A stretch of 64,000 nucleotides of DNA from Leucoraja erinacea (taxonomy: Eukaryota), in the NCBI RefSeq assembly GCF_028641065.1, contig NC_073400.1, positions 19,716,001 to 19,780,000 on the forward strand, in the 5' to 3' direction. The first letter of the stretch is position 1. Every line of letters begins with the position of its first letter. Shown here piece after piece: positions 9,488-63,250 of the stretch. The notes under the pieces are model-generated. The model saw only the letters and a program-made list of their open reading frames with translations. It did not search any database and was not told the DNA's origin. A program made the translations under genes and the position numbers.

Positions 9488-9635
9488 AGTTGGAGTCTGT
9501 TCATTTTATGTTGTTAATTTTATCCATCCGAGCTGATGCCCTGAATGCCCAGAGCCCATATGGAGGTCGGGAGCTGCAGTCAGGGTGATGAGCTGGTTCT
9601 GATGCACTGTTTGATCAATCACTGTTACAAATGGT
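9488..9635. promoter_or_regulatory. Conserved intron-1 element, gene A copy (putative enhancer)
   Basis: Shares exact CTGAATGCCCAGAGCCC and ATGAGCTGGTTCTGAT with the reverse complement of 63098-63250. Regulatory function is inferred. Confidence 0.5.
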
Positions 9636-9757
9636 CAGTAGGTGAAGAGAAGTGCTGGACTCGGAATATGGAGTAAAACATATGGGGGGAAAAGAGGGGA
9701 TGAAGGAAGGGAGGGAGTGAGAGAAAAAGAGTGGAAGGGGATAGGTTGTGACCTTAC

Positions 9758-9809
9758 CCAGAGAGATGGCAAGTAGGACGGGGCGGAGCAGGCAGGTGAG
9801 CCGCCCCAT
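9758..9809 (-). CDS. Gene A exon 1 coding part: signal peptide MGRLTCLLRPVLLAISL(A)
   Basis: Kozak context AAGATGG, hydrophobic core, phase-1 donor G|GTAAGG that joins the IgV exon in frame. Confidence 0.85.
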
Positions 9810-9976
9810 CTTCAACCGTCTCTGGGAGTCGGGGCGGGAGGCTTGGATGTTGTCGAAAAGAGCTTCCGGTTGACTGCGCCCGCCCGGGGAAAGGCGGCCG
9901 ATCCGCGGGCGTCGAGCTCACGGAGTCTGGGGCCCGTGTCCCTGCAGCCGGCACACTCCCTCTTCCTCTGCTCGGC

Positions 9977-9985
<9 letters not shown>
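9810..9985 (-). promoter_or_regulatory. GC/CpG-rich 5'UTR-promoter of gene A
   Basis: Local CpG enrichment, GC boxes (ggggcggg 9831, cgcccgccc ~9877), ETS cores (cttccgg ~9873, ctcttcctct ~9960). No TATA box seen. Confidence 0.55.
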
Positions 9986-10008
<23 letters not shown>

Positions 10009-10357
10009 TTCTACCCCCAAATCTCTCTCTCTCTCTCTCTTAATTCTGGCTCCCCGATTATCTCTCCCCAGCCATATTCCTCCATTTCTCTCTTCGCCAG
10101 CCATGTGTTTGTCGCGACCCCATCTCTCTCCTCCCATTGGTCTCTCCCTCTATTTCTCTCCCCCTACCCTTCCCACCATTGTTTCTTCCCCCCCCACACA
10201 TTTCTCTTCTTACATAACCTATGTTTCTATCTCAACGCCCATGTTCCTGCCCCACCCCATGCCTCTATGTCACTCAACCGCATCTCCTTCCTATCACACT
10301 CCTTCAAGCCTGGGTCCATTAGCTCTGGGAGTTGGTGGGGACCAAGGCCTTGACCGC

Positions 10358-11399
10358 GTAGGTATCTTACAAAACCTACCTTAATCGTCATTGAGAATCT
10401 GCCCCAGCCCGTGTGTGTGATGTTGGCGCTGTTTAGAGGGGGCGGGTTTAAAACGCGATTTTTACTAGGCTGTTGCAATCGAAAATGTTCAGCATAGTAA
10501 ATCATTAACGAAAAATCGCTGAAAGACCCCGTCGCAAAAGGTATTATTAGTTTTTATGGCCTTGTATAATAGTTATAGTAGTTTAAAAACCACTCTCTCA
10601 ACCCGCAACCTCTCGCAGCCCCAGGGTTTTATAAAGCAAACAATTAAAGGTATGTACCTTATTTTTACATTAAAAGGGGCTTCTTAAGAACCCTGTATAT
10701 AAAGTTTTCTATAGCGAGTAGCTCATTTTGGGCTCTTTATATCCCGCAGTATTTTTCTGGGCATTTGAGGGCACTAATCTAGCGCAATGTGAACGTTCTA
10801 AACCAGCGCGTTCACAGGAACCCACTAGAAAGCCGATTTAAAATGGACTTTAATTTACAACAATTGAACACTAAATTCCTTCCATTTGGCCTATAAATTG
10901 ATGTAAATGAGATTTTAAAATCATGTTTTATTGTGAATTATTTGTGAATATTATTTGGACACTTAGGCTATTTAAAAATGTTAATCATTTATTAAGAAAT
11001 GGATAGATGTTTAGATCTAGTAATTGAAGTTTGAAATTAGCTACAATTGGGTAACTAACTAATTATATGCTTTAATTTCAGGCCATCCAAGTAAGATTAT
11101 TTTATATTTGTTTCAGAATGGTTCAATCTATGATAACTGACAATTTCATTCAGTTCTCTTAATTTTTAAGAAGGTTATGGGCTTTTGACTGTCCATGATC
11201 ACAGCTTTTTTGTTATGTCCATAGAAAATCAATAGGGAACAAGATGCTAATTTCCGAGTATGAAAATGGCCATAACTTTTTTATTACTTGAGATATGAAA
11301 GTGAATTAGGTGCCAAATTAAACTTATTTTTATGCTTTATCTGATGGGATAAATTGCAGACTTGATTTTTTAAATCTCAAAATTTTGTAACATTGCTAC
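10358..11399. mobile_element. Non-autonomous DNA transposon (1042 bp) with imperfect 17-bp TIRs, superfamily unassigned
   Basis: Left end GTAGGTATCTTACAAAA; right end reverse complement GTAGCAATGTTACAAAA. AT-rich non-coding interior, sharply different from the flanks. Confidence 0.7.
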
Positions 11400-12269
11400 G
11401 AGTAGGGCCATGATGCCCGGTGTTGTGTATACAACAAACCCTTAATTATACCCGCCCACACTGCCCAATGTTATGTGCAGCGCACTTACACCCCCCCCCC
11501 CCCATCTCGTGCTGTGTACACCGACTCATTCCTCACTCCCAATTTTCACTGTCATGTACCCCAACCCTTTAATCACCCCCACTGTCCAGTACTGCGTGTA
11601 CATCAACGTGTTTGTAGGTAACGTGTTTATATAAAATTATACCTAATCTATAAACATCTGTGAATTCACCAATATCTGGTAACTAACCAACTGTCTTCCC
11701 CCTCCCCTCCCTCCTGTGCCCCACCTGGATACACACCCATTTTCTCTATCCCCTTCCACCTGTATTCCTTCCACTGGTTTCACATTTCAAGCTTCTTCCA
11801 TCCTTATCTCGCACATTTTGTCTTTTAATCTCTGGCATTTGTCCAGACATCTGCCAATCAAAATCCTCCTCAGTTGCACCCACCTATCACCTACCAGGCT
11901 TAGTCCCACCCTTACCTCTCCTCCAGCTTTCTCTCCCTCCCCCACTATAATCAGTCTGAAGAAGGGTCCCGACCCAAACGTTGGCTATCCATGTTCTCCA
12001 GAGATGCTGCCAGACCCGTGGAGTTAATCCAGCACTATTTGTCTTCTGTTAGCAGAACTAACAGGCTTGAGTTGTAGGCAGAGCCTGGATGTGCTGGGAC
12101 CTTTTACTTTACAGCTAGGGTTGACCTTTCAGAGGTGTACAAAATCACGAGGGGCATTGATAAAGTGAATACACAGTATTTTTCCGCCAGTGCAGAGCGT
12201 CCTGAACCAGAGGGTACAGACTGAGCGGGTAGATTTAAGAGGGTCATCAGGGGCAACCTTTTCACTCAA

Positions 12270-15750: not shown

Positions 15751-15965
15751 GTAAAATGAAGAAAGAAAAAATCCTCCTTAAATCTCTAAACCGCTCCAGC
15801 ACCTTCACCTCACCTATCTCTGAAAGCTTCTCCAGTCCCTACATCTCTCCCCAACTCTATGACCCTCCCAGAACACCACCCCTACCTCTACTACGGGCGT
15901 AATGAGAATGCATTAGAAAAGGCCTTTGAGGGATTATATATTTTTTAATTTAAAAAATAAAATAA

Positions 15966-18212: not shown

Positions 18213-18455
18213 ATTTTTTTCAGATTTTATTATTTAAAAATAAATAGATTTAAGCAGTAAAAATCTGAATGAACAGGAAATGTAAAGACTGGCAAGTCGG
18301 GCAGCACCTGCAGGGAGAGATTCAGATGGAATGATTGGGACCTGGTAAAATAAATCTGTATCTGTAAGACACCCCTGCCATGGAGAAGGATTTCCTCAAA
18401 TCTACACCTCTCATAATTTTGTAAACTTCTCAAATGAATTTAAAAAAAAAATGAA

Positions 18456-29830: not shown

Positions 29831-30200
29831 TTGAATGCCGCAAGAGCACCAATCTTGCTCTCAATTACAGCAAGGCCAAGGAGCTGAAACTTGACCTGCA
29901 AAGTTTCCTATACATGTTCTCCAGAGATGCTGCGTGACCCATTGAGATCCTTCAGCACGTTGTGCTACTTTTTGGAAACCAGCATCTGCAGTTCTTTGTT
30001 TCTATAAGAGATGGTTGTTGACTTTAGCAGGGAAAAGCCAAGGATCAACAAACCTGTTTTAATCAATGGGATGGCAATGGAAAGTGTCACAGCTTGATGT
30101 TCCTGGCCCCAACAAATCAATGAAATCATAAAAATAAACTCTCTGGGTACGAAGGAATCTCTGCTCCTTTCTAAAAACCAATTCCCCCTTTGACACTCAC

Positions 30201-30485
30201 CAGATGTGGGCTGTTTACAGACGTCTGTCAGGTAGATATGTGCCATGCCTGTACTGCCCGGGTTGGTGGCCTCACACCTGTACTCAACGTTCCTGTCCTC
30301 TGCTGTAGGATGAACCTCTATCGTCTCTCCTTGTCCCCGGAGGTGATGGATGCTGTCGTTTCCCAGAGCTTCTCCTCCCTTCCACCACATGAAGCTGGTG
30401 GGGTTGCCAGAGGTCACGGAGCAGTTCAGGTTGAAGTTGCAGATGCCCTTGTGCTGAACCGAGATCCGTGTTCCTGACACATGTT
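30201..30485 (-). CDS. Gene B exon 3: IgC2 domain (phase 1-1, 285 nt)
   Basis: Acceptor TTTCTTTGTCCCAACCCCAG, donor G|GTGAGT. Peptide EHVSGTRISV...ICNFNLNCSV...MWWKGG...YRCEATNPGS...DVCKQPTS has the four cysteines typical of CD2/SLAM C2 domains. The join gives LEVYEHVS. Confidence 0.92.
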
Positions 30486-33400
30486 CTGGGGTTGGGACAA
30501 AGAAATTAAAGATGAGTAAAAGACCCAGTTGTGGACATCTCAACAACCAACAACCTGCCCCCAACAGATGTAAGAGAACTTTAAGCCGATCCCAATTATT
30601 TCTACCCACCGGTTTAACTCTCCCCATCTCCTTCAGTTCAGACAGTTGTCGCTGGAGGAAGTCTACACGTGTGCTGCGCCCCCTTCCCAACCACTGTCCG
30701 CACTCATCCACAAACTCTCCACTGTGTCCTGTTTATGCCTCTGCATCATTGGAATTCTCTCTGGTTCCATATTATTTTATCAAGTGGTAAAATAGAAATA
30801 AAAGCAGGAGAAGGGTATTCGGCCCCTTGTTTTTCCTGCCACATAAGATCACGGCCCTTTCTTTTCCTTCAGCACCAGTTTCCTGCACTTTCCGTCCATT
30901 TCCATCACACACGCAATCCCAAGGATCTGTCTTGAATGTGCTCAGTAACTGAACCCCCACGAGGTTCAGTCCCTCTGGATGAAATATTCTCCATCTCTGT
31001 CCTGAATGGTCACGTGGGTTTTCTCCGGGTGCTCCGGTTTCCCCCCACACCCCAAAGAAGTTGATACAAAAAGCTGGAATTACGCAGCGGGTCAGACAGC
31101 ATCTCTGGAGAAATGGAACAGGTGACGTTTCGGGTCAAGCCCCTTCTGATTAACATGGGTCTGAAGAATATTATCAACTCGAACCGTCACCTTTCCTTTT
31201 CTCCAGATATGCTGCTCCACCCACTGCTTTTTGTGTCTATCTTCAGCTTAAACCAGCATCTGCTGTTCCTTCTTACACAGGTTTGTAGGTTAATTGGCTT
31301 CGGTAAAATTGTAAATTGTCCCTAATGGCTAGGATAATGCTTGAGTGTACGAGGTGAATGCTGGTTGGTGTGGACTCGATGGGCCGAAAAGCCTGGTTTA
31401 ACGCTGTATCTCTAAAGTCTAGAAAACCCTGACTCTCAGATGGTGGCTCCTGGTCCCAGAAACCGCAGCAGGGGAAATCCCCCTCACCACACCCACCCTG
31501 CTGAGTCCTGGAAGGAAGTTTCAGTGAGATCACCTCATCTTTCTCTCAATTCCAAAGTCTGCTTCATCCTCCCATGAGGCAAACCCACTAGTCACGGGAA
31601 TTGATCTGGTGGTTCCTTGCTGCACTTCCTCAGACACCATTAGATCCTTTCCCAGGGTGGAGGGGGTACAGGACCTGTCCACAAAATTCCACATGTGGTG
31701 TCACCAGCACTCTGCTAATGAATTGCTGGCTGTATCTGTGGGATAACTTTCACTGATTCCTGTGCAAGGAAACACTGATTCTTCCGAACAACAACATCTT
31801 AAGTCTCTCCGCATTAAATAATGATTCTGCTTTTCTATTATCCCTACACTGTGGATGACCACACATTTCCATGTTATAATCCTGCCGTGTCCCTGCCCAT
31901 GTATTTATCCTGATCCTATCTTCCAAAGATTTTCTACATCCACTCCACAGCCCCCACAGCACAGAGTTTTAGAGCTTGGGTAGGTTACACTCGATTCCCC
32001 CGTCCATTACAGGGATACAGATCCCTGCACCACCTCATTAGTCGCAATCTCCCAACATGAAAATAGCCCCCACACTCCTGCATTGTTTTTGTCTGTTAAC
32101 CAAACCAAACTCCACTCCAAGCTGGGAAGGATGCAGTGAAGATGTACGAGGATGTTCCCAAGACTTGAGGACCTGAACTACAGGGAGAAGTTGAGCAGGC
32201 TGACTCTATTCCTTGGAACGCAGTAGAATGAGGGGCGATCTTACAGAGGTGTACAAAATCATGAGAGGAATAGATCGGGTAAATGCAGAATCTCTTGCCC
32301 CGAGTAGGGGAATCAAGAACCTGAGGACATAGGTTTAAGGTGAGAGGTAAAAGATTTAATAGGAACCTGAGGGGTATCTTTTTCACACAAAGGGTGTTGG
32401 GAGTATGGATTGAGCTGCCAGAGGAGGTAGAAGGGGCTGGTACTATCGCTATAAGAAACATTTAAACCGGTACATGGATAGGATATGTTTAGACAGATAT
32501 GGAAGGTTTAGAGGGTCTGTGATGGGCACAGACCCAGACTGGGATAGCGTGCCGTGTTCCAGAGTGAATCCGGCACCGTGCAGATCCCGGGTCACACACC
32601 CTCTCCCCCACAGAGACTCAATCAGCTCACAGATCAGGGGGTGTAATCATCAAATTATTCCGATCTGCTGTGGGGCACATTTTTGGAATCAGAATGGAGA
32701 ATAAATCACAAAGGATAGAGCAGAGATCTACAGAGACAGAATAACAAGGTCATGGAAAGCAAAGTAGTCCAGTCCATCTAAGTAAGATCAAAATTGATCA
32801 GCCATGATCATATTGAATGGTGGTGCAGGCTCGAAGGGCCGAATGGCCTACTCCTGCACCTATTTTCTATGTTTCTAAAACAACAAAAAAATACTGCAGA
32901 TGCTGGAACCAGAAGCAAATACAAAACTGCTGGGGATCTCAGGCATCATCCTCCGTGGGTTTGACAGTAGCGCAGTGGTAGAGTTGCTGCATTCCTACAG
33001 CAAGGACCTGGGATTAATTCTGACTATGGGTGCTGTCTGTATGGAGTTTGTGTGTTCTCCCTGTGATCACATGGGATTTCTCTGGGTGCTCCGGTTTCCT
33101 CCCCCATTCCACAGACATGCAGGTTTGTAGGTTAATTGGCTTCCATAAATTGTCCTTAGTGTGTGATCGTTGGTTGGCGTGGACTAGATGGGCCGAAGCG
33201 CCTGTTTCCATGCTGTATCGATAAACCAAACTAAATTAAACTAATCTGTGGAGTGCCATGAATTAATTATTTTTTTAGTAGAGATTGAGACTCAGGACTG
33301 AGATTGTAGAGGAGAGATGGCCAGGGCATAGACGCGAGAGTGAGGGGTGAGTTAGGAGTTGGCAGACCACACAGAGAGCATGGCACACAGTTCTGGTTCC

Positions 33401-34357
33401 CGTATCCTTGGGTTGCACTGGCGAGACATGCAACTGGATCTGGAGCACAGGTCTTCCATACTATAGCTGTGATGTTGTCAGGAAACACTGCTCTCCCCAG
33501 GGCTCTCAACCATTTCCTGGGATCACATGGACTGAACTGAATAGTCCGGGGACAGTTCTGTGTTGGAGGGATCACAGACGGAAGCAGAGGGAGATCATCC
33601 ACTCACACCTCCGGCTGTGGAGGGGCATGTTTGTGGGTGATCAGCCTTGTCTCCAGCACTCACATGCAGGGTTCCCGCATCGCTGAGAATGGTGATGTTC
33701 TTAAAGACTCCTCACCACATGAGCTGTTGAATTGTCCACCACTAGTCATGACCAGATACGAGATGACTGTAGAGCTGTGACCTGAGCCATGGGCAGTGCG
33801 GTCCCTTAGCTCTATTTCATGCGGCTGTTTTTGCTGATGAGCTCGCACGTCGCCCTGTGTCACAGCTTCATCAGGCTGGCACCTCGTCGTGCTTAGCTAC
33901 ACCTGGTGCTGCTTCCAGCATGTCATCTGCGCTCCTCAGTGAACCAGGGATAACCCCCACTGGGTGACAGTAATGGTGGTGTGAGGGATGTGCTGGACTA
34001 TGAGATTACAGGCTGTGTGCAGGACATTTCTGCTGATGATGGTCCACAGCACCCCATGAATCCCAGTGTTCAGTTGTTGGGCCTGTTTTGACGGTGCTCA
34101 GCTCCTCCAGCCTCGGAGCCATGAGGTTCCCCGTTGACAGCTCGATCCTTCGCGGCCCCTTACCCAGTCTCCAGGGATGTCCCCCAGCTTGGCACTGCCC
34201 CAGTCCCATTACATTGGGACCGTCACCCCCCACTCTGGACACTGGCAGTCAGTGGGATTCAGTAAACAATGTACAGTATCAGCCTTCATCATTTATGTGG
34301 GATGAGGGGTTTCATTAAATGGTTAAACCCACACCCCTTGGTGGCGGTCTCACTCAC

Positions 34358-34675
34358 CGTATACCTCCAGTTGGACTGTGGACACATTCTTTGCTCCCGT
34401 ATCCAGTATTACAGTTACCTCGTAATCTCCCGTGTCCTGTGTCTGTAGGCTTAAAATTTCCAGACTGAAGTCATTGGGATGAAGATTTACTCGTCCCTTG
34501 TAATTGTTGTTATAGGTTTTAATTTTCCCGTTCTTATATTCCAGTACCCTGGTTCTGGATGACATGTGTTTCCACACAATCTCAAGATTGCTCACTTTGA
34601 CTCGAAGCCCAGAAGGTAACAAGGCCTTTTGTCCCACAGTTCCGATCACAGGGCCAGGGTCAGCCCCAGTCCCAG
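34358..34675 (-). CDS. Gene B exon 2: cysteine-less IgV domain (phase 1-1, 318 nt)
   Basis: Same splice sites as the gene A IgV exon. SGTGADPGPVIGTVGQKALLP...EIVWK...DTGDYEV...VQLEVY; about 81% amino-acid identity to gene A by hand alignment. Confidence 0.92.
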
Positions 34676-36309
34676 CTGAGGAGACAAGAGAGGAGGTCAG
34701 CAGAAGAACACAATAACTGGATGTGGAACTTTACATGATCAAACTCAGGTCTCTGGCGCTGTAAGGCACCAACTCCACCACTGCGCTACTATGTTGCCTT
34801 CAGACTTGACTAATGAATAGCAGATTATCAATTAACTCTTCCATTTTACACAATATTGGGTCTAAAATTGCCCTCTTCATCATTGGTTCCTGAACATGTT
34901 GAACTATAAAACTATCCTTGCGTTTGTTCCTCTATGGTGTCATCAAACTAACAGCATTGAAATAGGCCATTCGGCTCAACAAGTCTAGGCTGAACAAGTT
35001 GCCAAAGTGAGCTAGTCCACCTTGCCTGCATTTTGACTACATCACTCAAAATCTTTCTTATCCATACACCTGTCCAAGTGTCTTTTAAATGTCGTAATTA
35101 TATCTGCCTCTATATCTATTGGCAGCTTGTTCCATATACACACCACCCACAATGTGAAAAAGCTGTCTACAAAGTCCTTTTTAATTCTTTCTTCTCTCAC
35201 TTTAAATATATTACCTTTAGATTTATATTCCCCTACTCTGGGAAAAGACTATGTTTATTCACTTTATCTGTGCCTATCACAATTTTATAAGCATCTATAA
35301 GCTGACCCCTCAATCTCTTATGCTCCAGCGTAAAAAGTGTAGCCTATCCAGCCTCTCCTTTTTTGACTGGATAGGAAAGATTTAGTGGGATGTGGGCCAA
35401 ATGCAGGAAGGTAGGACTGGCGTGCATGGGGCACGGTCGGCATGGGCATGTTGGGCCAATGGGTCTGATTCCGAATTGTATGACTCTATGATGCTATAAC
35501 TCAAACCAGGTAACATGTATCGTAAGTTTTTATTTGCATCTTTTCCTGTTTAATTTATCATCCAACAGCATTGAGATCAGAACTATTGCACTACTTTACT
35601 AGTGGCATTATCAATATCCTGTACAGCTGTAATATGCCCTGCACTTAATATCCTGACTGATGAAAGCAAATGTGCCAAATACCTCCTTTTTCCACCCTGT
35701 CCAGCTGTTTTGATACTATGTGCCTCCACCCCTAGGTCTCTCTGTCCTACAATACCTATCTACTATTTACTATGTAAGTCCTGCTCTGGTTTGTCCTACC
35801 AAAGTAAAATACTTCACATTTATCTGAATTAAACTCGATCTGTCATTCCTCAACCCTCTGGCCTAGTTGATCAGGATCCCATTGTAATCATGGATAATCT
35901 TCTTCACGTCCACTATACACCAATTTTAGTTTCATATACAAACCTACCAATAATGCCAGCTGGTTCTCATCCAAATTGTTAATATAAATGTTGAACAACC
36001 CAGTACCCATTCCTGCAGCACACCTAGAGTCATAGACCTCCGGTCTTAAAACAAATGCATATCACTACCCAGTCACTTCTACCATCAAGCCAATTATATT
36101 TCAATTATGACACCATGTGATATAACTTTCTGGACAGCTTACCAAGTGGCACCTTGTCAAAGGCCTTGTTAAAGTCCACATTGGCAAGACCCATCATGCT
36201 ATCTTCATCTTTCTAGTCACCTTGTCAAAAACTCACTCAAATTCCTGAGACACAAATTCTCAAGCACAAAGCCATAGTAACCATCCCTATTCAGTCTTTG
36301 TCTTTCCAA

Positions 36310-39076: not shown

Positions 39077-39184
39077 CCGATGGAAAAAGGCTTGAATCCT
39101 CACATCCAACCTATGCCCTGGGACTGTGGCAGTGCAGAGCAAGAACAAGCATTGAAATTCACCAAGAAATGATAAGCCTGAAAC

Positions 39185-39290
39185 TCTTGTTCAGCCTAAG
39201 CCCTTGTGAGAGATCAGAAACCTGCTGTTAAGCTGCGATAAGGGAGGGCGTTTACTCAAACGATCAAATGGTGGCAGGAAGTGGTTTGCA
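39185..39290. promoter_or_regulatory. Conserved intron-1 element, second and more diverged gene B copy
   Basis: gggagggcgtttactcaaacgatcaaatggtggcaggaagtggtt matches the reverse complement of 63098-63146. Confidence 0.5.
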
Positions 39291-40357
39291 ACATATTCTG
39301 GAGGCGGTTGGGAAATATATGAAGCAGGAAATGTTGTTGAACGAGAGAGAGACTAACTGAGGGAGAGAGAGAGAAAGAGAGAGAGAGGGAGAGAGATAGA
39401 AAGAAGGAAGAAAAGAAAGAGACAGACAGACTAATCTGCAGAGTGTGTGACCCATGGAAGTGATGGAAGACAAGCAGACAGAGTGAGAGAGACTAAGTGC
39501 CAAATAGTGGAAAAACATTTGTATAGTGAGAAAGTGAGAGAACTCAAAAAGGAGAAAAAGAGTGACAAGAAAAGATCTGAGCTGCACCCTCGGAGTGAGT
39601 GATTGGATGTGGTAAACAGAGCTTTCCTGTTACTTCTGTAAATGAGGAAATTCAGCACGTCTCCAATGACTCTTACAAACTTTTACAGATGCACCATAGA
39701 AACCATATTTTCGGCTTAAATGACAACTTGATTTGTGAACAGCTCTGCACAAGACCACAAAAGATTAGCAGTGGATGTCGCCCAGTCCACCACACAGACT
39801 GGCCTATCCACATTGACTCCTCATGCACTTCAAACTGCCTTTGAAAATCAGCTAACAAGACTTGACCCACGCCGGTTCTTCCTTCTTCATCTCTACAACA
39901 CTGAGAAATACATTCCACTCTCTGTATCTTTCCCTTTCCTCTATATATTGTACTTGAGTTTGTCTTGATTATATTTATGTATAGTATTATCTGATCGGAT
40001 TGGATAGCATCCAAAACTATTGTTTTCACTTTACCTCGGTACACATGACAATAATAAACCTAAACTGCCATATTTCACCCGTGCCATGAGACTGTCTAAG
40101 GGAGATTGTGTAAATAGAACTTCACATTGTTTAAAAACTGTATCTTTGGAAATTTTAACCGGACAGACGAGACCCATGTTTACTTGATATCTATCGAATG
40201 TCCCAGTAATTTGCCATGTGTCAGTGTAAAGGGGAAACTGCCTGTGTAGTTGATCCGTGCTCTGAAATATGTGATGGAAATGTGCAAAGGGAGCTTCATT
40301 CTATGTCTAATCATGCCCTGGGAATATGGACTGCGTAGAGTGAGGATAGTTGCTGGA

Positions 40358-40489
40358 ATCCATCAAAGAACAAATGGGTCTGAAGGCTCAGAGCCCATTA
40401 GTGATTGGGAACTGCTGTCAAGTTGTAATAAGTTGATTCACAAAGAGAGAGTGTTTGGTCAAACAATGCATCAAATCGTGGCAGGAAGC
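40358..40489. promoter_or_regulatory. Conserved intron-1 element, first gene B copy
   Basis: atccatca...tctgaaggctcagagccc...ctgctgtca...gtgtttggtcaaacaatgcatcaaatcgtggcaggaag is collinear with the gene A and gene C copies. Confidence 0.55.
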
Positions 40490-41103
40490 ATACAACACTT
40501 CTGGTGAAGATGCAAGGCGGAAAATGGCGCGGCCCTAATATTTTGAGAGAGAACGATGAAGAGAGAGAAAGATGAAGAGATAGAAAGAGCAACTGATCTG
40601 CAGAGAGAGCGACGTTGAAATAAGTGTTGGAAGAAAAGCAAAGCAAATAAATTGAAACACCAAAACTGAGTTAAGGACAAAGACAAATAAATAAGGGCGA
40701 ACTTAAGAGGAAGAGAGGAAGCTTTCTGGAGTTAGAGGGCAGAAGACTGCATGCCCTATTTCAGGCTGAGCGTAAAGAGAGTCGCCACACATATACATTG
40801 AAAACCTCAAAGGTTCACATGCATGTCTCTGCTCCATAACTAGAGTAAAGTAATTAAAATCTAAGATAAACAAAATGGTGGGCAGAGAGCAGTTAGGGGA
40901 AGTACCTCAAGGTGAACTATATTTTGAATCTTTATTTGGATGTTTGGTGCTTTGGTGATTGTTCTAGCTAATATTTCAAACATTATAAAGAGAGCTTTAC
41001 TTAGTAACGAAACACTGTCCAGAGAGTGCAAGATGGGATTCTGCTGGAGAGAGAGAAATTAAGCACAAAGTTAAACAGACAGGTTCTTTTTGATTAAACT
41101 TAC

Positions 41104-41158
41104 AGTCTGAGATGGCCAGCATGAGCCAGAAGGAGATTGGCAGGCACCTGAAGTCCAT
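41104..41158 (-). CDS. Gene B exon 1 coding part: signal peptide MDFRCLPISFWLMLAISD(S)
   Basis: Kozak context GATATGG, phase-1 donor T|GTAAGT. Resembles the gene A leader (CL...LLAIS). Upstream GC box (~41253) and GAGGAAGT PU.1/ETS site (~41280). Confidence 0.82.
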
Positions 41159-41644
41159 ATCTCACCGCGTACTGCAGTGTGTGATAGGGGAGGCTTCCTC
41201 TTGTATAGATTTGTAGTATGTGCGCTGACTGTTGAAGCGTTGAGCGTCTAAAGGCGGGGTTTGGCCCAGTGATCACATCGAGGAAGTCAAATGACAGCAA
41301 TGGCATTGTGTAGGAAGAAACTCCAGATGCTGGTTTATACCAAAGATAGACACAAAATGCTGGAGTAAGAGTGTCAGGCAGCCATTTTGTTAAAAATAAT
41401 ACGTGCCATTTCGGGTCGGAACCTTTCTTCAGAGTGAATGTAAAGGTGGGGGTAGAAATAAACTGGAGGCGAGAAAATGCCAGAACAAATTAGGACCACG
41501 ACAGATGACCTCAGGAACGGTGGAGACCATAATGGCCCATTGTTGGCGAGGGACGGTGTGATAATAAGAGGATACCAAAATGCATACAGTGGAACTGGTA
41601 GGATGACTAGGGTGAGGGAGGGGGAAAGGGAAGGAAGGAGAGTT

Positions 41645-42023
41645 TCTTATAGAAACTTACAAAATTCTTAAGGGGTTGGACAGGCTAGATGCAGGAAGAT
41701 TGTTCCAGATGTTGGGGAAGTCCAGGACAAGGGGTCACAGTTTAAGGATAAGGGGGAAATCCTTTAAAACCGAGATGAGAAGAACTTTTTTCACACAGAG
41801 AGTGGTGAATCTCTGGAACTCTCTGCCACAGAGGGTAGTTGAGGCCAGTTCATTGGCTATATTTAAGAGGGAGTTAGATGTGGCCCTTGTGGCTAAGGGG
41901 ATCAGAGGGTATGGAGAGAAGGCAGGTACGGGATACTGAGTTGGATGATCAGCCATGATCATATTGAATGGCGGTGCAGGCTCGAAGGGCCGAATGGCCT
42001 GCACCTAATTTCTATGTTTCTAT
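41645..42023 (+). mobile_element. Young CR1 3' fragment nested in a Penelope-like remnant (~41310-42560)
   Basis: Near-identical to 5627-6013; flanked by minus- and plus-strand Penelope GIY-YIG debris. Confidence 0.85.
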
Positions 42024-45000
42024 GAGAGGGAATGCAGGAGGTACTTAATTAGGGAAATCAACGTTCATTCTTCTGGGTTGTTAGCTGCCAAAGCAAAATA
42101 TGGGGTGTTGTTCCTCCAATTTGCATGTGGCCTCACTCTGAGAGAGGACACCTTTCACCCCATCAGCATCATATACAACACATCATCCTCCAATATTTTC
42201 ATCACCTTCAATGGGACTCCACCACTAGTGACATTTTCCCACCTCCATCCCATTCTGCTTTCTGCAGAGATTCTCTCCGCAAAAATATATATCAGCGAGA
42301 CCTAGCGTAGACTTTCTGGTTGTTTTGCTGAGCATTTACGCTCAGTCCGTCTTGGCCTATATGATCTCCCGATTATTTTAATTTCCCTAATCATTCCCAT
42401 ACTGACCTTTCTGTCCAGGGATTCATTCACTGTCAGAGTGAGGCCACACGCAACTTGGAGGAACAGCATCTCATATTTTGCTTGGACAGTTTACAACTGG
42501 TATGATATTGATTTCTCTAATTTCAAGTAACTCCTGCATTCCCTCTCCTCCCTTCCCTTGCCCCCCTCCTTAGTCATCTTTGGGGTCACAACTCCCTGGA
42601 AATGGCAACATGTGAATAGAGTGGTAAAGAAGATATGCAGTTTTATAGGTTGCCTTCATAGGTTGGGGCATTGAGTATCACAGGTAGGACGTCATATTGC
42701 AGCTTTATACTGTAAGACTTTGGTTAGGTCACATTTGGTGTAGTGTGTGTGGTTCCCATTGCCCATTAAAGGAGGGAGGTGGAGACTTTGTAGATTGTGC
42801 AGTATACCAGATTGGTGCATGAGGGTATTGGCTGCCAGGAGAAGTTGGACAAACTTGAATTGTTTTCTCTGGAGCATTGGAGATTGAGAGGAAATCTGAC
42901 AGAGGTGTATAAAATTGTAAGAGATATAGAAAGGGTAGACAAGCAGAACCTTTTCACAGGGTGAAAATGTCAAAGAATGAAATGGGTAGCTTTATGTTGA
43001 GAGGGGTAAAGTTTAAAGGAGATGTGTGGATGTTTTTTTAAACGGAATGACGGGTGCCTGGAATGTGCATCCAGGGGTGATGGTGGAGGAAGACACAACA
43101 GAGGCTTTTTGTTAGACACATGGATATGCAGGGAATGGAGGGAAATAGATTACGTGCAGACAGGGGAGATTAGTTTAACATATGTTTAGCCCAGACATTG
43201 TGGGCCAAGTGTCTGCTATTGCACGGCCACACGGTGGCCGCCGGTTCCATCCTTGTTCCTGTCATGCCGCTGGTTGTTCTCATCGGCTGCCGGGTCTGGC
43301 CACGTTCTCGCCAGGCCAGCCGGGTCCCTCCTTGCATGGCTCTGTGGTGCCCGCTGGAAGCCAATTAACCTAGAAACCTGTACGTTTTTAGAGTGTGGGA
43401 GGAAACCAGAGCACCCAGAGAAAACCCACGCGGTCACAAGGAGAACATACATACAGGTACAGCAGGTGATCACAGACAGGGAGGTCAGAATGGGAGTGGG
43501 ATGGAGAATTAAAGTGGGAGATAAAGGGAAGCTCAGGGACACACCTGCAGATTGAACACAGATGCCTGTGAAAAGGTAATTCCATCTGCACTTGTTTTTC
43601 TCATGTAGAGGAAGCCACATACTAAACACGGTTCAAGTGTGAAGAATGTTTAGTTGCCATATTTACAAAAACGGAACAATGAAATTCATACTTGCAGCAG
43701 CATAAGAAGTTTGTAAACACAGTACTCAACTGATCACATAATAAAACAAACAAAAAGGTTGAAGTGTGCTTCTTCACCCCTCATCCATTTGCACTGGGAC
43801 ATTCAGGGACCTGTGGACTTGTACCCCAAGGATCCTCTGTTCATCAACATACTCTAGGGCTCCACCATTTACTATTAATGTTTCACCATTGTTTCCCCTC
43901 CCAAAATGCCCTCCTTTGTGTTTGTCAGGTTTAAATTACATTTTCTCTTTTCTCAGCCAGTCTTTCCATCTTGGACAACTTTCCTTGCAATCAATACATG
44001 GCTTTCCATGAGAACCACCAATTTTCATATTATCAGCAAACTTAGTTATCACACTTCATACCTTCACATCAAAGGTCTAAATATGCTGTGGGACAGATTC
44101 GGTCAGAGAATTCCAATCAGAAAAAACAATTTCACCCCCACCCTCTGCCTCTTATTACCAAACAATTTTGCATCTAATTTACTTGTTTGCACTGAACGCA
44201 GTGAGCTTTAACTTGCTTGATTGGCCTAGTACATGGGACCTTATAAAATGTCTCACTATTCCTTGGAGAATGAGAGAAGATCAAAGAGAGGTGTTTGAAA
44301 TCATAAGGGGAATTGATAGAGTGAATGTAGAAAGTCCTTTTCCCAGGATAGAGGAATCACAAAGTAGAGGGCACAGGTTTAAGGTGAGAGGGGAAAGATA
44401 TGAGGTAAGTGAGGGACAACCTTTTCACACAGAGGGTTGTGGTTACATGGAACAAACTGCCAAAGGAAGTAGTCGAGGTAGACAATAACAACAATTAAAA
44501 TACATTTAGACGGTTACCTGAAGAGGAAAGAGGGATTTGGGCCAAAAGTGATCAAATGGGAAGAGATTCCATGGGATATCTTAGGCGGCATGAACGAGTT
44601 GGACCACAGGATTTATTTCCATGTTCTATGACTCTGAGGTTCATGTAGACAATGTCTTCGCACTCCCCTCAATAACATGTTCAACCAGATCCTCAAAAAA
44701 CGCAGTCATATTTGTGAGAAGGATTTTGCATGAACAAGGCCATGCTGATTATCCCTAATCTATCCCCGTCTCCCTAAGTGAAAACATATCCTGTTCCTTA
44801 GATATTTTTCCAATAGTTACTCTTCCACTGACTGACCAGTTGTTATATGCTGAGCTTCTTAATAAAGGAACAACATTTACTATCCTCCATTCACCTGGTA
44901 TTTCACCTGTGGCTAATGAAGATGTAAAATGTCGATTGGGGACATGTAGTCTCCACCTTTGCATTCCACAGCAGCCTGGGGTAAATCACATTTGGCTTTG

Positions 45001-58877: not shown

Positions 58878-61800
58878 AAAATAGGTGCAAGAGTAGGCCA
58901 TTCAGCCCTTTGAGCCAGCACAGCTATTCTATATGATCATGGCTGATCATCCAAAATCAGTACCCCGTTCTGGCGTTTACCGCATATCCCTTGATTCCCT
59001 TAGCCCTAAGACTTAATCTAACTCACTCTTGAAAACATCCAGTGAATTGGCCTCCGCTGCCTTCTATGGCAGAGAATTCCACAGATTCACAACTCACTGG
59101 GTGAAAAAAGTTTTCCGCATCTCAGTCCTAAATGGTCTACCCCTTATTCTTAAACTGTGACCCCTGATTCTGGACTCCCTCTACATCGGAAACATTTTAC
59201 CTGCATCTACCCTGTCCAATCCTCTAAGAGTTTTATATGTTTCTATAAGATTCCCTCTAGCGAATAGAAGCCCAGTCGACCCATTCTTTCATCATACGTC
59301 AGTACCGCCCTCCCGGGAATTAACCTGGTGAACCTACGTTGCACTCCCTTAATAGCAATAATGTCCTTCCTCAAATGAGGAAACCAAAATTGCATACAAT
59401 ACTCCAGGCGTGGTCTCACCGAGGGCCTGTACAACTACAGTTGGACCTCCATGCTCCTAAACGCAAATCCTCTCATAACTAATTGAAAAATTCCGGAAGT
59501 GGAGGCGCTGTCAAGCTGCTGCGGCTCGCCTGCAGTCTGTCTGTCTTTTCTTTTTTTTGTTTTCTTTTGTCTTGTTAGATGCATGTTTTAGTTTATTTTT
59601 AGTTGTGTATGTGTGGGGGGTGGGGGAAACTTTTTTAAAACCTCTTCCTTCAACGGGGATGTGACCTTTTCCTTTTCGTATCTCCGTCTCCGTCTGCGCT
59701 GATCTCCGGTAAAATAGTTTGAATGACAATGACAATAAGGAAATTCAATACAATATGCCATTGGCTTTCTTCATAGCCTGTTGTAGCTGCACGCTTTCAG
59801 TGACTGATGTACAAGCACACCCAGGTCTTGTTGCACCCTCCCCACCCCCCCACCCCCACTTCTCCTAATCTGACACCATTCAGATAATAATCTGCCTTCC
59901 TGTTCTTGCCACCAAAATGGATAACCTCACATTAATCCACATTATACTGCATCTGCCATGCTTCTGCTCACTCATCCAACCTATCCAAGTCACCCTGAGC
60001 CTCATAGCATCCTCCTCGTAGCTCACAATGCCACCAAGCTTTGTGTTATCTGCAAACGTAGAGATGTTACATTTAATTCCCTTGTCTAAATCGTTAATCT
60101 ATATTACTAAAAGTCTGTTCTTGACCGGTTTTGGCCATCTGTGCTGCAATTTCCGAGAGAACGCCACCACCTACGGCCGTCATTTTTGGCCACCTTGCTC
60201 AGAGCGCCCCTCCGCCATATGTGTGCCGAGGATTTTTCCCATCGATGAAAAATGACAGAGATATTAATGATTTTACAAAATTCCCCATTCTCTCTGCTGC
60301 CCCTGCTGGCGGCAGGGGGGAGGGACTATAAAACCAGGAAGTGGTGTGCCTCAATCAGTGTCTGCAAGCTGGAAGAAGGCAGAGGGTCACGTTTCTCTGA
60401 ACTGTGAATAACACTGAACACATGTCTACTCAAACGTAAGTGGCCTTAATGGTTCTAAAACGCTTGCAGAATGTGTCTATTGGTTCTAAAATGTTTGCAA
60501 AAAGTGTTTATTGGTTCTAAAATGTTTGCAAAAAGTGTCTCTTTTTTGGTTCTACAATGCTTGCAGAATGTGTCTTTTTTGGTTCTAAAATGTTTTTTAG
60601 GTTCTCCCCCCCCCCCCCCCTCTCCTCTCCCCCCCCTCCCCCTCCCCCCCCCTCCTCTCTCTCCCCCCTCCTCCTCTCCCCCCCCCCCTCTCCTCTCCAC
60701 CCCCCCCTCTCCTCTCCCCCCCTCCTCCTCCTCCTCCCCCCCTTTTTTCTCCCCCTCCATCCCCATCCCCTCACCCACCATCCTTCCCCTAAACCCCCTC
60801 CCCTCCACACACCCCTACCCCCTTCCCTCCACCCGTCCCTGCTCCCCCCCTCTCACCCTCCCCTTTCAGCACACCCCCTCTTTCCCCCTCCCCCCTCCCT
60901 CTCCCTCCTCCCTCCTCTCCTCCCCTCCCCCTCCCCCTCTCTCTCTCCCCACCCCCCCTCTCCCCTCCACTACCCCCCACCTCTCCCCCCCCTCCCCTCC
61001 CCTTAAACCCCCTCCCCTCCACACTCTCTACCCTCTTCCCTCCCCCCTACCTCCCCCTCCCTGCTCCCCACCTCTCCCCCTCACCCCCCTCTCAGCACAC
61101 CCCCTCTATCTCCCCCTCATTCTCACCCTCTCCTCCCCTCCTTCCTCCCCCCCTTCCCTCTTCTCCTCCGCTCCACCCCCCTCTCCCTCTTGCCCCTCTC
61201 TCTGTGTCTCTGTCTCTGCCCCTTCTCTCTCTGCCCTCACTCTCTACACCCGCCCCCTCCCCCCCTCTCTAGGTGTGACTGCAAGTTGGGGGCTATGCGT
61301 CAGTAGATAAGGTGTTTATGGGGTAAAAGGAGCAAATTAATAATATTAATATAATATCAAGGGGGGTAATTAGCGTGAGTGCGGGGGAGATAGTTAGTGT
61401 GTGTGACGCTGCATGCCGCCTACACCCACAGTCTAGTATATATTGTAAACAATGGGAGTCCCAACACCGAGCCTTGCGACATCCCACTAGTCACTGCCTG
61501 CCATTCTGAAAAGGACCCGTTAATGCCTACTCTTTGCTTCCTGTCTGCCAATCCGTTCTCTACCCATGTCAACCATGTCAATACCTTACCCCCAATACCA
61601 TGTGCTGTACGTTTGCGCAGTAATCTCTTGTGTGGGAACTTTTCAAAGGCTTTTTCAAAGTCCAGATGCACCACATCCAGTGGCTCTCCCTTATACATTC
61701 AATTTGTTACCTCGTCAAAAAATTTCAAAAGATTAGTCAAACATGATATCCCCTTCATAAATCCATGCTGACTTTGACCGATCCCGTCACTGTTTTCCAT

Positions 61801-61890
61801 ATGCGCTGCTATAACATCTTTTATAATCGACTCCAGCTCTATTCCCCACTACCGATGTAAGGCTAACTGGTTTATAATTCCCCCTTTTCT
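58878..61890 (-). mobile_element. CR1 LINE interrupted by a repeat head (~59480-59750) and a Helitron
   Basis: RPRLEYCMQFW and LDVVHLDFEKAFEKFPHKRLL peptides. The sequence is contiguous across the Helitron (aaatcgttaa|tatatattgtaaac). Confidence 0.9.
60098..61436 (+). mobile_element. Non-autonomous Helitron with internal tandem repeats and a C-rich low-complexity tract
   Basis: 5'-TC (TCTATATTACTAAAAG) and 3'-CTAG termini, inserted between A and T of a CR1 with no TSD. ggttctaaaa repeats at 60450-60605; C-rich tract at 60605-61270. Confidence 0.85.
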
Positions 61891-61992
61891 CACTCACTGG
61901 AAAGTGGAGTTACATTGGCTGCACTGCAGTACACAGGAAAAGAGAGGGAGAGAGAGGAGAGAGAGAGAGAGAGAGAGAGGAGAGGATGAAGA

Positions 61993-62193
61993 NNNNNNNN
62001 NNNNNNNNNNNNNNNNNNNNNNNNNNNNNNNNNNNNNNNNNNNNNNNNNNNNNNNNNNNNNNNNNNNNNNNNNNNNNNNNNNNNNNNNNNNNNNNNNNNN
62101 NNNNNNNNNNNNNNNNNNNNNNNNNNNNNNNNNNNNNNNNNNNNNNNNNNNNNNNNNNNNNNNNNNNNNNNNNNNNNNNNNNNNNNNNNNNNN
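61993..62193. other. Assembly gap (~200 N)
   Basis: Run of N next to a (GA)n tract. Confidence 1.
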
Positions 62194-62526
62194 GGACTGT
62201 GTGCGGATGTGTGCATGGAGAGGTACATGCAACGATGTAGAGAGAGTCACATATGTAGAGAGTTATAATAATACGGTCCATGAGACAGAGATCAACTGAT
62301 GCATAGAGACTGGGATAGAGATTCTAATTAAAACAAAATGAAAAAGCAAACAAGTCAGAATGTTGGTACGGAAGAGGTCAGTGCAATGTGTTTCTTCTCT
62401 GTATGTATCCTCTGTCACATGCAGAACATGCTGCCTATTACCCTATCACAGGCGGGTCTGAGGAGGAGTCAGTTCCTGATCTTTTCACTTATTTTAAATC
62501 TCGCATCGCTGAAACATCACTTCAAG

Positions 62527-62593
62527 ATGTGGCACTTTTCTTTGAGGAGGATCCCCTTCCTACTCTGTGCATCCCTCATCGCCGTCTTTGTAG
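62527..62593 (+). CDS. Probable gene C exon 1 coding part: signal peptide MWHFSLRRIPFLLCASLIAVFV(x); likely a third family member running off the window
   Basis: AAGATG start context as in gene A, hydrophobic core, phase-1 donor G|GTAAGT. Followed by a pyrimidine tract and the family intron-1 element, as in genes A and B. Family assignment is indirect. Confidence 0.7.
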
Positions 62594-63097
62594 GTAAGTA
62601 CAGATATTAATGATCAACTCTGGTTATCGATGGGTATGAGGATTGTGCAGGTTTTCCAACCCATTCAACCCATTGTGGTAATTTCCTGGCTTCATGCTAG
62701 CCCAAATGCTGCCACACTGTCATAAAGGTGGGACACACTGGTCTCTCATTCGGTCCATCTCTCTGTCATTCACAGCCCCTCTTCCATTCTGCTGATGTTA
62801 TCTTTCTTTATCTCTCTCTCTATCGAAACACTCCTTCTCTCACTGACCCTATTTCTGTGCCTCTTTCTCCAGTTCTGTCACTTTCTGCTGGTTCCTGACA
62901 TCTCTACAAACCTCTCTGTAGTTAACATTGTATTGCCATTTGTGCCTCGCTATCTCTCTCCCTCCCTCCCTCCCTCCCTCCCTCCCTTCAACAACCTCCC
63001 GCCCTCCACCCATTCCACTACTCTCGCTTTACATCCGCAGTCCAGCTCTATTTTTCACTTCACATACTTCTTGTTCAGCAAAGTGTTCTGAGCCTGA

Positions 63098-63250
63098 ACC
63101 ACTTCCTGCCACCATTTGATGCAATGTTTGACCAAACACCCTCCCTATCAGAACCAGCTCATTGCACCCTGACAGCAGCTTCTGACTTCTACAGGGCTCT
63201 GGGCATTCAGACTATGAGCTCTGATGGATAACAGTAATGAACCCCAACTC
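63098..63250. promoter_or_regulatory. Conserved intron-1 element, gene C copy
   Basis: aaccacttcctgccaccatttgatgcaatgtttgaccaaaca...gggctctgggcattcag...gatggat is homologous to 9488-9635, 39185-39290 and 40358-40489. Confidence 0.55.

What the first reader, a model, noticed from the sequence alone, without database searches (positions are those of the whole stretch)
9488..63250. A ~130-bp non-coding element conserved in intron 1 of all three genes: candidate family-wide lymphoid enhancer
Seen: four collinear copies (9488-9635, 39185-39290, 40358-40489, 63098-63250), always within about 0.1-1.9 kb after the leader donor and in the same gene-relative orientation. The surrounding intron-1 DNA does not align and the leaders are strongly diverged. 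The gene A and C copies share exact 17- and 16-mers. The core GTGTTTGGTCAAACA(A/T)TGCATCAAATGGTGGCAGGAAGTGGTT packs a TGTTTG-NN-CAAACA palindrome (forkhead-like), a TCF/LEF-like ATCAAA, an E-box CAAATG, an ETS site CAGGAAGT and a RUNX-like GTGGTT. Gene A has lost the ETS/RUNX end. Established: ETS-RUNX/E-box/TCF clusters typify T/NK-cell enhancers. Inference: a cis-regulatory module co-duplicated with the family and conserved better than the signal-peptide exon.
Basis: partly seen in the sequence, partly recalled or inferred. Interest (0 to 1): 0.75.

Follow-up and report, generated by a model that had tools for sequence, protein, structure and literature searches.

The report
Conserved intron-1 element in skate SLAM genes
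Three neighbouring little-skate immune-receptor genes of the SLAM/CD2 family each keep the same ~130-letter non-coding stretch just after their first exon, better preserved than the exon itself, so it is probably a shared gene-control element, though no activity has been measured.

Summary
A profile of the four copies finds exactly those four places in the 64-kb window (9517-9642, 39152-39279, 40353-40486, 63103-63234). Each lies 115-1823 nt after a phase-1 leader donor and in the same gene-relative direction. The copies are 57-76% identical. The leader exons are 51-57% identical, the 200 nt before each ATG 50-52%, and the rest of intron 1 does not align apart from CT-rich tracts.

- It is not a high-copy repeat: in DNA contigs of three runs, copy A has the depth of its single-copy flanks (36-63), against more than 100,000 for a true repeat 1 kb away.
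- It is not coding, matches no Rfam family and does not fold better than shuffles.
- A gene model of another skate, Rhinoraja longicauda (P0002), translates the whole element ahead of a V exon, so the element exists outside this genome.
- Copies B1 and C carry CAGGAAGTGG, the published consensus of ETS1-specific T-cell enhancers.

"Co-duplicated and conserved" is supported. "Family-wide" and "lymphoid enhancer" are untested, because the tool that fetches other loci was closed. The main rival is an alternative exon or promoter. The assembly gap (61993-62193) lies 334 nt before gene C's ATG, outside every copy.

The parts
9514..9642 (-). Copy A of the element, in intron 1 of gene A, 115 nt after the leader donor. 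Blocks III-V are well kept; the ETS end is degenerate in the window's version.
   Evidence: nhmmer E 2.7e-32; blastn against C, 78% over 128 nt; 17-mer and 16-mer shared with C.
40353..40487 (-). Copy B2, in intron 1 of gene B, 616 nt after the leader donor. It keeps CTTCCTGCCAC and the exact palindrome TGTTTGGTCAAACA.
   Evidence: nhmmer E 2.2e-34; 76% identical to C.
39152..39284 (-). Copy B1, in intron 1 of gene B, 1823 nt after the leader donor. It is the most decayed copy overall (57-65%) yet shares an exact 24-mer with C at the ETS/E-box end, including CAGGAAGTGG.
   Evidence: nhmmer E 1.2e-23; 24-mer.
63099..63237 (+). Copy C, in intron 1 of gene C, 509 nt after the leader donor. It is closest to the consensus and carries CAGGAAGTGG (on the minus strand) and the palindrome TGTTTGACCAAACA.
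   Evidence: nhmmer E 6.6e-38; matched in three frames by the N-terminus of Rhinoraja P0002.
9758..9809 (-). Leader exon of gene A (MGRLTCLLRPVLLAISL, phase 1, donor GTAAGG).
   Evidence: Read. The leader type resembles P0023 (MSLTCLF...), a weak tblastn match with E 0.5.
41104..41158 (-). Leader exon of gene B (MDFRCLPISFWLMLAISD, phase 1, donor GTAAGT).
   Evidence: 18 of 18 residues identical to NCBI protein P0001.
62527..62593 (+). Leader exon of gene C (MWHFSLRRIPFLLCASLIAVFV, phase 1, donor GTAAGT). The rest of the gene lies beyond the window.
   Evidence: tblastn with P0008, P0015 and P0020: 79-83% identity.
7228..7545 (-). V-set exon of gene A; its acceptor marks the end of intron 1.
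   Evidence: ORF; Pfam V-set E 7e-7 and Receptor_2B4 E 1e-5; acceptor read.
34358..34675 (-). V-set exon of gene B; its acceptor marks the end of the 6.4-kb intron 1.
   Evidence: ORF; Pfam; the P0001 sequence.
62954..62987 (+). (CTCC)n tract just upstream, in gene sense, of copy C. CT-rich tracts lie in the same relative place at A (about 9697-9740), B2 (about 40545-40590) and B1 (about 39340-39440).
   Evidence: TRF; low-complexity blastn hits; sequences.
61993..62193 (.). Assembly gap, 334 nt before the ATG of gene C. It is not part of the element.

Best explanation
The element is a paralogous conserved non-coding element. It is a stretch of about 130 nt that already lay in intron 1 of the ancestral SLAM/CD2-type receptor gene. 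It was copied with the gene, and once more inside gene B. Selection has kept it while the leader exon, the promoter-proximal DNA and the rest of the intron diverged beyond alignment.

The most likely job is promoter-proximal transcriptional control, as an intronic enhancer that may also act as a downstream or alternative promoter. Transcription factors would bind the block at the leader-proximal end: an ETS site of the ETS1-enhancer type (CAGGAAGTGG), followed by CCATTTGAT and a 14-nt palindrome. Further factors would bind the three remaining blocks.

Shown: the copies, their position and direction, their excess conservation, their non-repeat, non-coding and non-structured nature, and the element's presence in a second skate family.

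Inferred: selection, factor binding, and any lymphoid activity.
For: - The profile finds 4 of 4 hits in intron 1, none elsewhere in the 64 kb, and all in one gene-relative direction.
- Element identity is 57-76% with z 3.8-16.2 and 0 of 500 shuffles reaching the observed score. Leaders are 51-57% (z 1.6-2.8). The 200 nt before the ATG are 50-52%.
- No other intron-1 alignment appears apart from CT-rich tracts.
- The proteins of the same genes are far apart. Gene B's P0001 is 51% identical to the gene-C orthologue P0015, with a tree path of about 1.7 changes per column. The element (B2-C 76%) is therefore better kept than the Ig domains.
- Copy A has single-copy depth in DNA contigs: 35.8-41.7 (X1) and 41.5-63.3 (X3). 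The flanks read 23-55, and the repeat at 8156-8443 reads above 100,000.
- Different copies keep different blocks. B1 keeps a 24-mer exact with C at the ETS end while its other blocks are roughly 30-63% identical to C. A keeps the middle and far blocks. This is modular constraint.
- CAGGAAGTGG is exact in B1 and C: 3 hits in the window against 0.34 expected. It equals the consensus of the ETS1-specific enhancer Motif 3 (PMC2787013, passages read).
- The N-terminus of Rhinoraja P0002 is collinear with the element in three frames, with E 1.75e-5 against copy C.
Against: - There are no functional data of any kind.
- Only three genes were examined, so 'family-wide' is unknown.
- Gene conversion is active in this cluster. 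A and B share a 1.6-kb block at 93%, and Ig domains group by taxon although leaders and tails are shared across taxa. Old short conversion patches could mimic constraint.
- Cartilaginous fish evolve slowly (recalled, not tested). Part of the identity could therefore be slow neutral decay of a surviving intron fragment.
- Copy A's ETS end is degenerate and copy B2 lacks the RUNX-like part, so the supposed key site is not kept in all copies.
- Contigs of organism D (run X13) left bins 9404-9595 empty at 80% likeness. This is a hole or a loss.
- A third CAGGAAGTGG lies outside any copy, at 60335.
- Motif labels other than ETS rest on pattern matching only.
Confidence: 0.5

Rival explanations
1. 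The element is a transcribed alternative exon: an alternative first exon with its own ETS-type promoter, or a cassette or 'poison' exon. Its conservation would then reflect splicing or 5'UTR function rather than enhancer activity.
For: - The Rhinoraja gene model P0002 uses the whole element as its first coding exon. The model joins it after 'MDK' to sequence just before the V exon.
- Copy C has a GT (63234-63235, GTAATG) at the place where that exon would end, in phase 1 like the normal leader (read).
- All four copies have a pyrimidine-rich run ending in CAG 12-30 nt before the CTTCC core.
- A CT-rich tract precedes every copy.
Against: - No GT lies at that place in A or B2.
- Stops occur in 23 of the 24 frames counted, and the indels between copies are not multiples of three.
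- P0002 has no signal peptide at its N-terminus. Its sister model P0009 also reads through the V-exon acceptor, and its N-terminal 'GAVMGTDPDWDNV' resembles an unrelated window ORF. These N-termini therefore look like gene-prediction fill-ins.
- The oligo-dT RNA run X24 gave 0 reads on 8828-9950. That is one run, read at about 5%, from an unknown tissue.
Confidence: 0.17
2. The element is a neutral survivor or a gene-conversion patch. It would be a fragment of the ancestral intron that escaped deletion and insertion in a slowly evolving genome, or was homogenised long ago by short conversion tracts, and has no function.
For: - Conversion or recent exchange is evident in the cluster: 93% identity over 1.6 kb between A and B, and the Ig-domain tree groups by taxon.
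- Copy B1 and the ETS end of copy A are decaying.
- No functional data exist.
Against: - The leader exon lies only 115 nt from copy A and is not homogenised (51-57%). The element has the same boundaries in all pairs.
- The identity is far below that of the known converted block, so any conversion would be old.
- B1 shows 24 of 24 identity with C at one end, while its other blocks are roughly 30-63% identical to C. Uniform neutral decay does not predict that.
- The element is present in Rhinoraja as well.
Confidence: 0.18
3. The element is a fragment of an old interspersed repeat (SINE, MITE or similar), either inserted independently or present in the ancestor by chance.
For: - The size (about 130 nt) and sharp ends are compatible with a small repeat.
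- The window is rich in transposons (LINE and Gypsy ORFs).
- A weak 21-nt direct repeat (15 of 21) flanks copy A.
- Copies less than 80% alike would not have been laid.
Against: - There are no further copies in the 64 kb.
- All four copies lie in the same kind of place and in the same direction.
- Copy A has single-copy depth in three DNA runs, while a true repeat in the same stretch piles up more than 1000-fold.
- No terminal inverted repeats and no tRNA-like head were found.
- The metagenome scan of the 24-mer gave 0 hits. This is of little weight.
Confidence: 0.1
4. The element encodes a structured non-coding RNA hosted in the intron, such as a miRNA precursor or a snoRNA.
For: - A 14-nt palindrome is kept in three or four copies. 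In B1 its outer pair is changed on both sides, T..A to C..G.
Against: - Rfam gave 0 matches at the gathering threshold over the whole window, and 0 at E <= 1 over copy C.
- The eight folds (four copies, both strands) have z-scores from -0.52 to +1.69 against shuffles.
Confidence: 0.03

Closest known systems
Paralogous (duplicated) conserved non-coding elements of vertebrates, e.g. PMC3595034 and PMC1896008 (search listing and abstracts only)
   Same: A short non-coding stretch is kept in collinear position beside or inside each of several paralogous genes. It is more conserved than its surroundings and is taken as a candidate cis-regulatory module. Different paralogues keep different sub-blocks.
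   Different: The described sets come mostly from whole-genome duplicates of developmental regulators and are conserved from fish to mammals at high identity. This element sits in tandemly duplicated, fast-evolving immune-receptor genes, is only 57-76% identical, and is so far seen in two skate families only.
ETS1/RUNX composite sites of T-cell enhancers (TCR alpha and beta enhancers; Motif 3 and Motif 4 of Hollenhorst et al. 2009, PMC2787013; passages read)
   Same: CAGGAAGTGG, exact in copies B1 and C, is the consensus of the ETS1-specific enhancer Motif 3. The paper states that A or T at the sixth position both support ETS1-RUNX co-occupancy.
   Different: Those sites were defined by ChIP in human T cells; nothing has been measured here. 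Copy B2 has CAGGAAGC and copy A is degenerate. The same 10-mer also occurs once outside the element.
Human SLAMF1 regulatory elements (PMC5662279; passages read)
   Same: A SLAM-family gene is controlled by a promoter plus intragenic enhancers.
   Different: The described human enhancers lie in intron 3, 1.5 kb upstream, and 3 kb downstream of the coding sequence, not in intron 1. No sequence relation was tested.

Membership tests
Paralogous conserved non-coding element | Non-coding: no reading frame kept among the copies | tested here: met
   Stops occur in 23 of 24 frames (four copies, two strands, three frames). Only one antisense frame of B2 is open. The indels between copies are not multiples of three.
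Paralogous conserved non-coding element | More conserved than neighbouring non-coding DNA and than weakly constrained coding DNA of the same genes | tested here: met
   The element is 57-76% identical, the leaders 51-57% and the upstream 200 nt 50-52%. Nothing else in intron 1 aligns except CT-rich tracts.
Paralogous conserved non-coding element | Collinear position and direction relative to each paralogue | tested here: met
   The copies lie 115-1823 nt after the leader donor, all in the same gene-relative direction.
Paralogous conserved non-coding element | Also conserved at orthologous loci of other species | tested here: inconclusive
   Rhinoraja P0002 translates the element (E 1.75e-5), but its DNA could not be fetched. 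Run X3 holds copy A nearly unchanged and is too close to be informative. Run X13 has a hole over 9404-9595.
Transcriptional enhancer (lymphoid, ETS/RUNX type) | Binding-site content typical of the class | tested here: inconclusive
   CAGGAAGTGG is exact in 2 of 4 copies and matches the published Motif 3 consensus. The other labels were not tested.
Transcriptional enhancer (lymphoid, ETS/RUNX type) | Open, acetylated chromatin in the relevant cells and reporter activity independent of position | not testable with these tools
   No chromatin or reporter data were within reach.
Interspersed repeat (SINE/MITE) | Many dispersed copies in the genome | tested here: not met
   There is no fifth copy in the 64 kb. 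Copy A has single-copy depth at 80% likeness or more in three DNA runs, against more than 100,000 for a true repeat nearby. Limit: copies less than 80% alike are not seen.
Interspersed repeat (SINE/MITE) | Terminal inverted repeats, target-site duplications or a tRNA-like head | tested here: not met
   No terminal inverted repeats in any of the four regions. Only a weak direct repeat (15 of 21) lies around copy A. ARAGORN found 0 genes.
Structured RNA family | Match to a curated family, or a fold more stable than shuffles | tested here: not met
   Rfam gave 0 hits. Fold z-scores run from -0.52 to +1.69.
Alternative exon | Splice sites kept at both ends, plus RNA evidence | tested here: inconclusive
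   An acceptor-like pyrimidine run ending in CAG is present in 4 of 4 copies. A GT at the expected end is present in C only. There is one predicted model in Rhinoraja. Run X24 gave 0 RNA reads on copy A.

The most novel reading that the evidence does not exclude
The element is an ancient shared control switch of the cartilaginous-fish SLAM/CD2 receptor family. It would be an ETS(/RUNX)-driven intron-1 module older than the split of the leader lineages, which are shared by skates, sawfish and rays. It would have been kept in many family members, giving them coordinated expression in lymphocytes or NK-like cells. It would also have been exonised as a new first exon in some genes, as in Rhinoraja P0002.
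Probability: 0.2. Interest if true: 0.65.

Novelty: new member of a known kind. Interest (0 to 1): 0.4.

Why it matters
Almost nothing is known about how immune-receptor genes are switched on in sharks and rays. A short module shared by several SLAM-family genes would be a concrete, clonable handle:
- It could be tested in reporter assays.
- It could mark which cells of a skate use these receptors.
- It would show whether the ETS/RUNX logic of mammalian T/NK-cell enhancers was already in place in cartilaginous fish.

It also gives a fixed landmark in a gene cluster whose coding exons are scrambled by gene conversion. If it proves neutral or a prediction artefact, it is only a footnote to the annotation of this cluster.

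Tried and rejected
- Structured RNA: rejected. Rfam was blank and the folds are no better than shuffles.
- Coding exon: rejected. There are stops in 23 of 24 frames and frame-breaking indels.
- High-copy repeat: rejected at 80% likeness or more. No terminal repeats and no tRNA head were found.
- Word search with the N-terminal part of P0002: it found only P0002 itself.
- Metagenome scan of the 24-mer: 0 hits.
- The scan's own index, by sequence and by words: nothing on this element.
- Paper searches: they gave no paper on SLAM-family regulation in cartilaginous fish and no intron-1 enhancer of a SLAM gene. That is all I can say about print. Supplements were not consulted, and the tables of PMC2787013 could bear on the motif claim.
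- P0009 as a second Rhinoraja model that translates the element: dropped. Its local matches have E 0.5-1.
- RNA evidence: the one RNA run laid (X24) gave no reads on leader A or copy A. This neither supports nor refutes that gene A is expressed.
The joined step was left out, and the database protein P0001 was used instead.
Full report
WHAT IS THERE. The window carries three SLAM/CD2-type receptor genes. The V-exon ORFs at 7220-7624(-) and 34350-34649(-) match Pfam V-set (E 7e-7) and Receptor_2B4 (E 1e-5), and the ORF at 29965-30711(-) holds a C2-type Ig domain. The NCBI protein P0001 ('CD48 antigen-like [Leucoraja erinacea]', 297 aa) is 100% identical to gene B. This names the organism and confirms leader B. 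Earlier notes of the scan place the window in a large little-skate SLAM/CD2 cluster.

THE COPIES. A four-way alignment and an nhmmer profile built from it find four places and no others:
- 63103-63234(-), E 6.6e-38
- 40353-40486(+), E 2.2e-34
- 9517-9642(+), E 2.7e-32
- 39152-39279(+), E 1.2e-23
The next hits have E >= 0.05 and are internal palindrome echoes or noise. B1-C share a 24-mer and B2-C a 15-mer. The 19-letter pattern CTTCCTGCCACNATTTGAT occurs 3 times against 0.14 expected.

POSITION. Leader exons were read and checked by tblastn. All three are phase 1 with a GTAAG donor.
- A: 9758-9809(-)
- B: 41104-41158(-), 18 of 18 residues identical to P0001
- C: 62527-62593(+), 83% identical to Rhinoraja P0008 and 82% to Amblyraja P0015
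The element follows the donor by 115 nt (A), 616 nt (B2), 1823 nt (B1) and 509 nt (C), and always points the same way relative to the gene. Leader A rests on my reading and a weak resemblance to P0023 (E 0.5). The assembly gap 61993-62193 begins in a (GA)n run. It lies 334 nt before the ATG of gene C, so no copy and no leader-to-element interval crosses it. Its continuity was not tested.

IS IT MORE THAN CHANCE OR NEUTRAL DECAY?
- Global alignments give 57-76% identical columns for the element, with z 3.8 to 16.2 and 0 of 500 shuffles reaching the observed score.
- The leader exons give 51-57% (z 1.6-2.8).
- The 200 nt before each ATG give 50-52%.
- blastn at two sensitivities finds nothing else in the 5' regions except CT/GA low-complexity tracts. 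There is also a weak extension of the A-C alignment to 9749/62991 at 68%.
- The proteins of these gene lineages are distant. P0001 (gene B) is 51% identical to P0015, the Amblyraja orthologue of gene C. The tree path between them is about 1.7 changes per column.
The element is therefore better kept than the signal peptide, and by this indirect measure better than the Ig domains.

Constraint is also uneven. B1 is the most decayed copy yet is 24 of 24 identical to C at the end nearest the leader. A keeps the middle and far blocks and has a degenerate near end.

REPEAT TEST. I laid Logan contigs of three runs (X1 labelled DNA? by the tool; X3 and X13 of unrecorded kind, their pieces reading as genomic DNA) and raw reads of one RNA run on 7100-9950 at 80% likeness.
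- The two bins over copy A have word depth 35.8 and 41.7 (X1) and 41.5 and 63.3 (X3).
- Neighbouring bins have 23-55.
- 8156-8443, in the same intron, exceeds 100,000 in all three.
At this sensitivity copy A is single-copy. Copies less than 80% alike would be missed.

Run X13 (organism D, about 5-7% diverged in its listed pieces) has no contig over 9404-9595, although it covers 9632-9937. The tool warns that a hole proves nothing, but it is not support either. There are no terminal inverted repeats. Only a weak direct repeat (15 of 21) flanks copy A, and there is no tRNA-like head.

NOT RNA STRUCTURE, NOT CODING. Rfam gave no match at the gathering threshold over the window and none at E <= 1 over copy C. 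The eight folds have z from -0.52 to +1.69. Stops occur in 23 of 24 frames.

Protein models gave an indirect view. The N-terminus of Rhinoraja longicauda P0002 (415 aa, V-C2-C2) is collinear with the whole element in gene sense, switching frame twice:
- residues 10-19 against 63104-63133;
- residues 25-35 against 63150-63182 (10 of 11 identical);
- residues 37-48 against 63187-63222 (10 of 12 identical), with a joint E of 1.75e-5 for these last two matches;
- its 'MDK' end equals the translation of copy A.
So the element stands before a V exon, in the same direction, in a second skate family. The frame switches again argue against a conserved protein. P0002 lacks a signal peptide. Like P0009, it reads through the V-exon acceptor region ('LLLTASLVSS'). 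I therefore take these N-termini for prediction fill-ins, not proof of an exon.

WHAT IT PROBABLY DOES. The end nearest the leader holds CAGGAAGTGG in B1 and C (3 hits in the window against 0.34 expected; the third, at 60335, is outside any copy). Hollenhorst et al. 2009 (PMC2787013, passages read) give exactly this string as the consensus of the motif at ETS1-specific T-cell enhancers. They liken it to the ETS/RUNX composite of the TCR enhancers and state that A or T at the sixth position both allow ETS1-RUNX co-occupancy. Next comes CCATTTGAT, and then a 14-nt palindrome that is exact in B2 and C and has one mismatch in A. In B1 the palindrome's outer pair is changed on both sides.

I therefore rate a promoter-proximal cis-regulatory module as the best reading (0.5). 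This is an inference from conservation and one literature-backed motif. Nothing shows activity, cell type, or which factors bind.

RIVALS.
- Alternative exon or promoter (0.17). It draws on the P0002 model, on a GT at 63234 in copy C where that exon would end in phase 1, and on a pyrimidine run ending in CAG before every copy. But A and B2 lack the GT, and the one RNA run gave 0 reads over 8828-9950.
- Neutral relic or old conversion patch (0.18). It draws on the clear exchange between A and B (93% over 6012-7598 against 33151-34728). It also draws on a tree in which Ig domains group by taxon although leader and tail types are shared by skates, sawfish and rays. Against it stand the unconverted leader 115 nt away, the common boundaries, and the uneven constraint.
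- Old repeat (0.1) and structured RNA (0.03) fare worse.

A DETAIL ON COPY A. Contigs of X1 and X3 carry 30 extra letters between 9635 and 9632 (table 5c; TGGT stands on both sides). The insert contains GGAAGTG and resembles the same part of copy C. All their contigs over 9665-9729 also differ from the window at four places. Whether this is the other allele or a near-identical second copy is open. Either way, 'gene A has lost the ETS end' describes only the assembled version.

VERDICT. The functional label is plausible but untested, and 'family-wide' is unknown. This is a new member of a known kind, a paralogous conserved non-coding element, and is of moderate interest.

Noticed in passing
window 6012-7598 and 33151-34728: Genes A and B share a 1.6-kb block at 93% identity (V exon plus the following intron), although their leaders and the rest of intron 1 do not align. 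This points to recent gene conversion or a patchwork duplication.
   Followed up: partly
window 9632-9635: Contigs of two public runs (X1, X3) hold 30 extra letters here, flanked by TGGT on both sides and containing GGAAGTG. The same contigs differ from the window at 9665, 9689, 9697 and 9729. It is an allele or a near-identical second copy.
   Followed up: partly
window 8156-8800: A very high-copy repeat lies inside intron 1 of gene A. Word depth exceeds 100,000 in three DNA runs, and about 100-fold read depth appears on both strands in the RNA run.
   Followed up: no
window 62954-62987; about 9697-9740; about 40545-40590; about 39340-39440: A CT-rich tract, (CTCC)n at copy C, lies just before every copy in gene sense. 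It may belong to the module, serve as a polypyrimidine tract, or be a microsatellite seeded in the ancestor.
   Followed up: partly
window 39274-39292 and 39324-39342: Copy B1 has a second, weaker GGAA-bearing repeat of its ETS end, 50 nt nearer the leader (74% over 19 nt). It recalls the 30-letter doubling seen at copy A.
   Followed up: no
window 60335-60344: A third exact CAGGAAGTGG lies outside any copy, about 2.2 kb before the ATG of gene C and beside a long proline-rich low-complexity stretch.
   Followed up: no
proteins P0002 and P0009 (Rhinoraja longicauda): Both gene models lack a signal peptide and read through the V-exon acceptor region ('LLLTASLVSS'). P0009's N-terminal 'GAVMGTDPDWDNV' resembles the window ORF at 174-509. 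These are probably mis-modelled N-termini.
   Followed up: partly
proteins P0001-P0035: Leader types (MD.RC... and MW.F.LR...) and cytoplasmic tails are shared between skates, sawfish and rays. The Ig-domain-dominated tree nevertheless splits skates from the rest. This suggests concerted evolution of the Ig exons.
   Followed up: partly
window 5627-6013 and 41645-42024: A 387-nt stretch is 95% identical between the region downstream of gene A's V exon and the region upstream of gene B's leader. It is probably a young repeat.
   Followed up: no
window 41105-41221: The 5'UTR of gene B translates to a peptide 49% identical to the N-terminal extension of sawfish P0004. The region before the leader therefore seems conserved between orthologues across batoids.
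   Followed up: no
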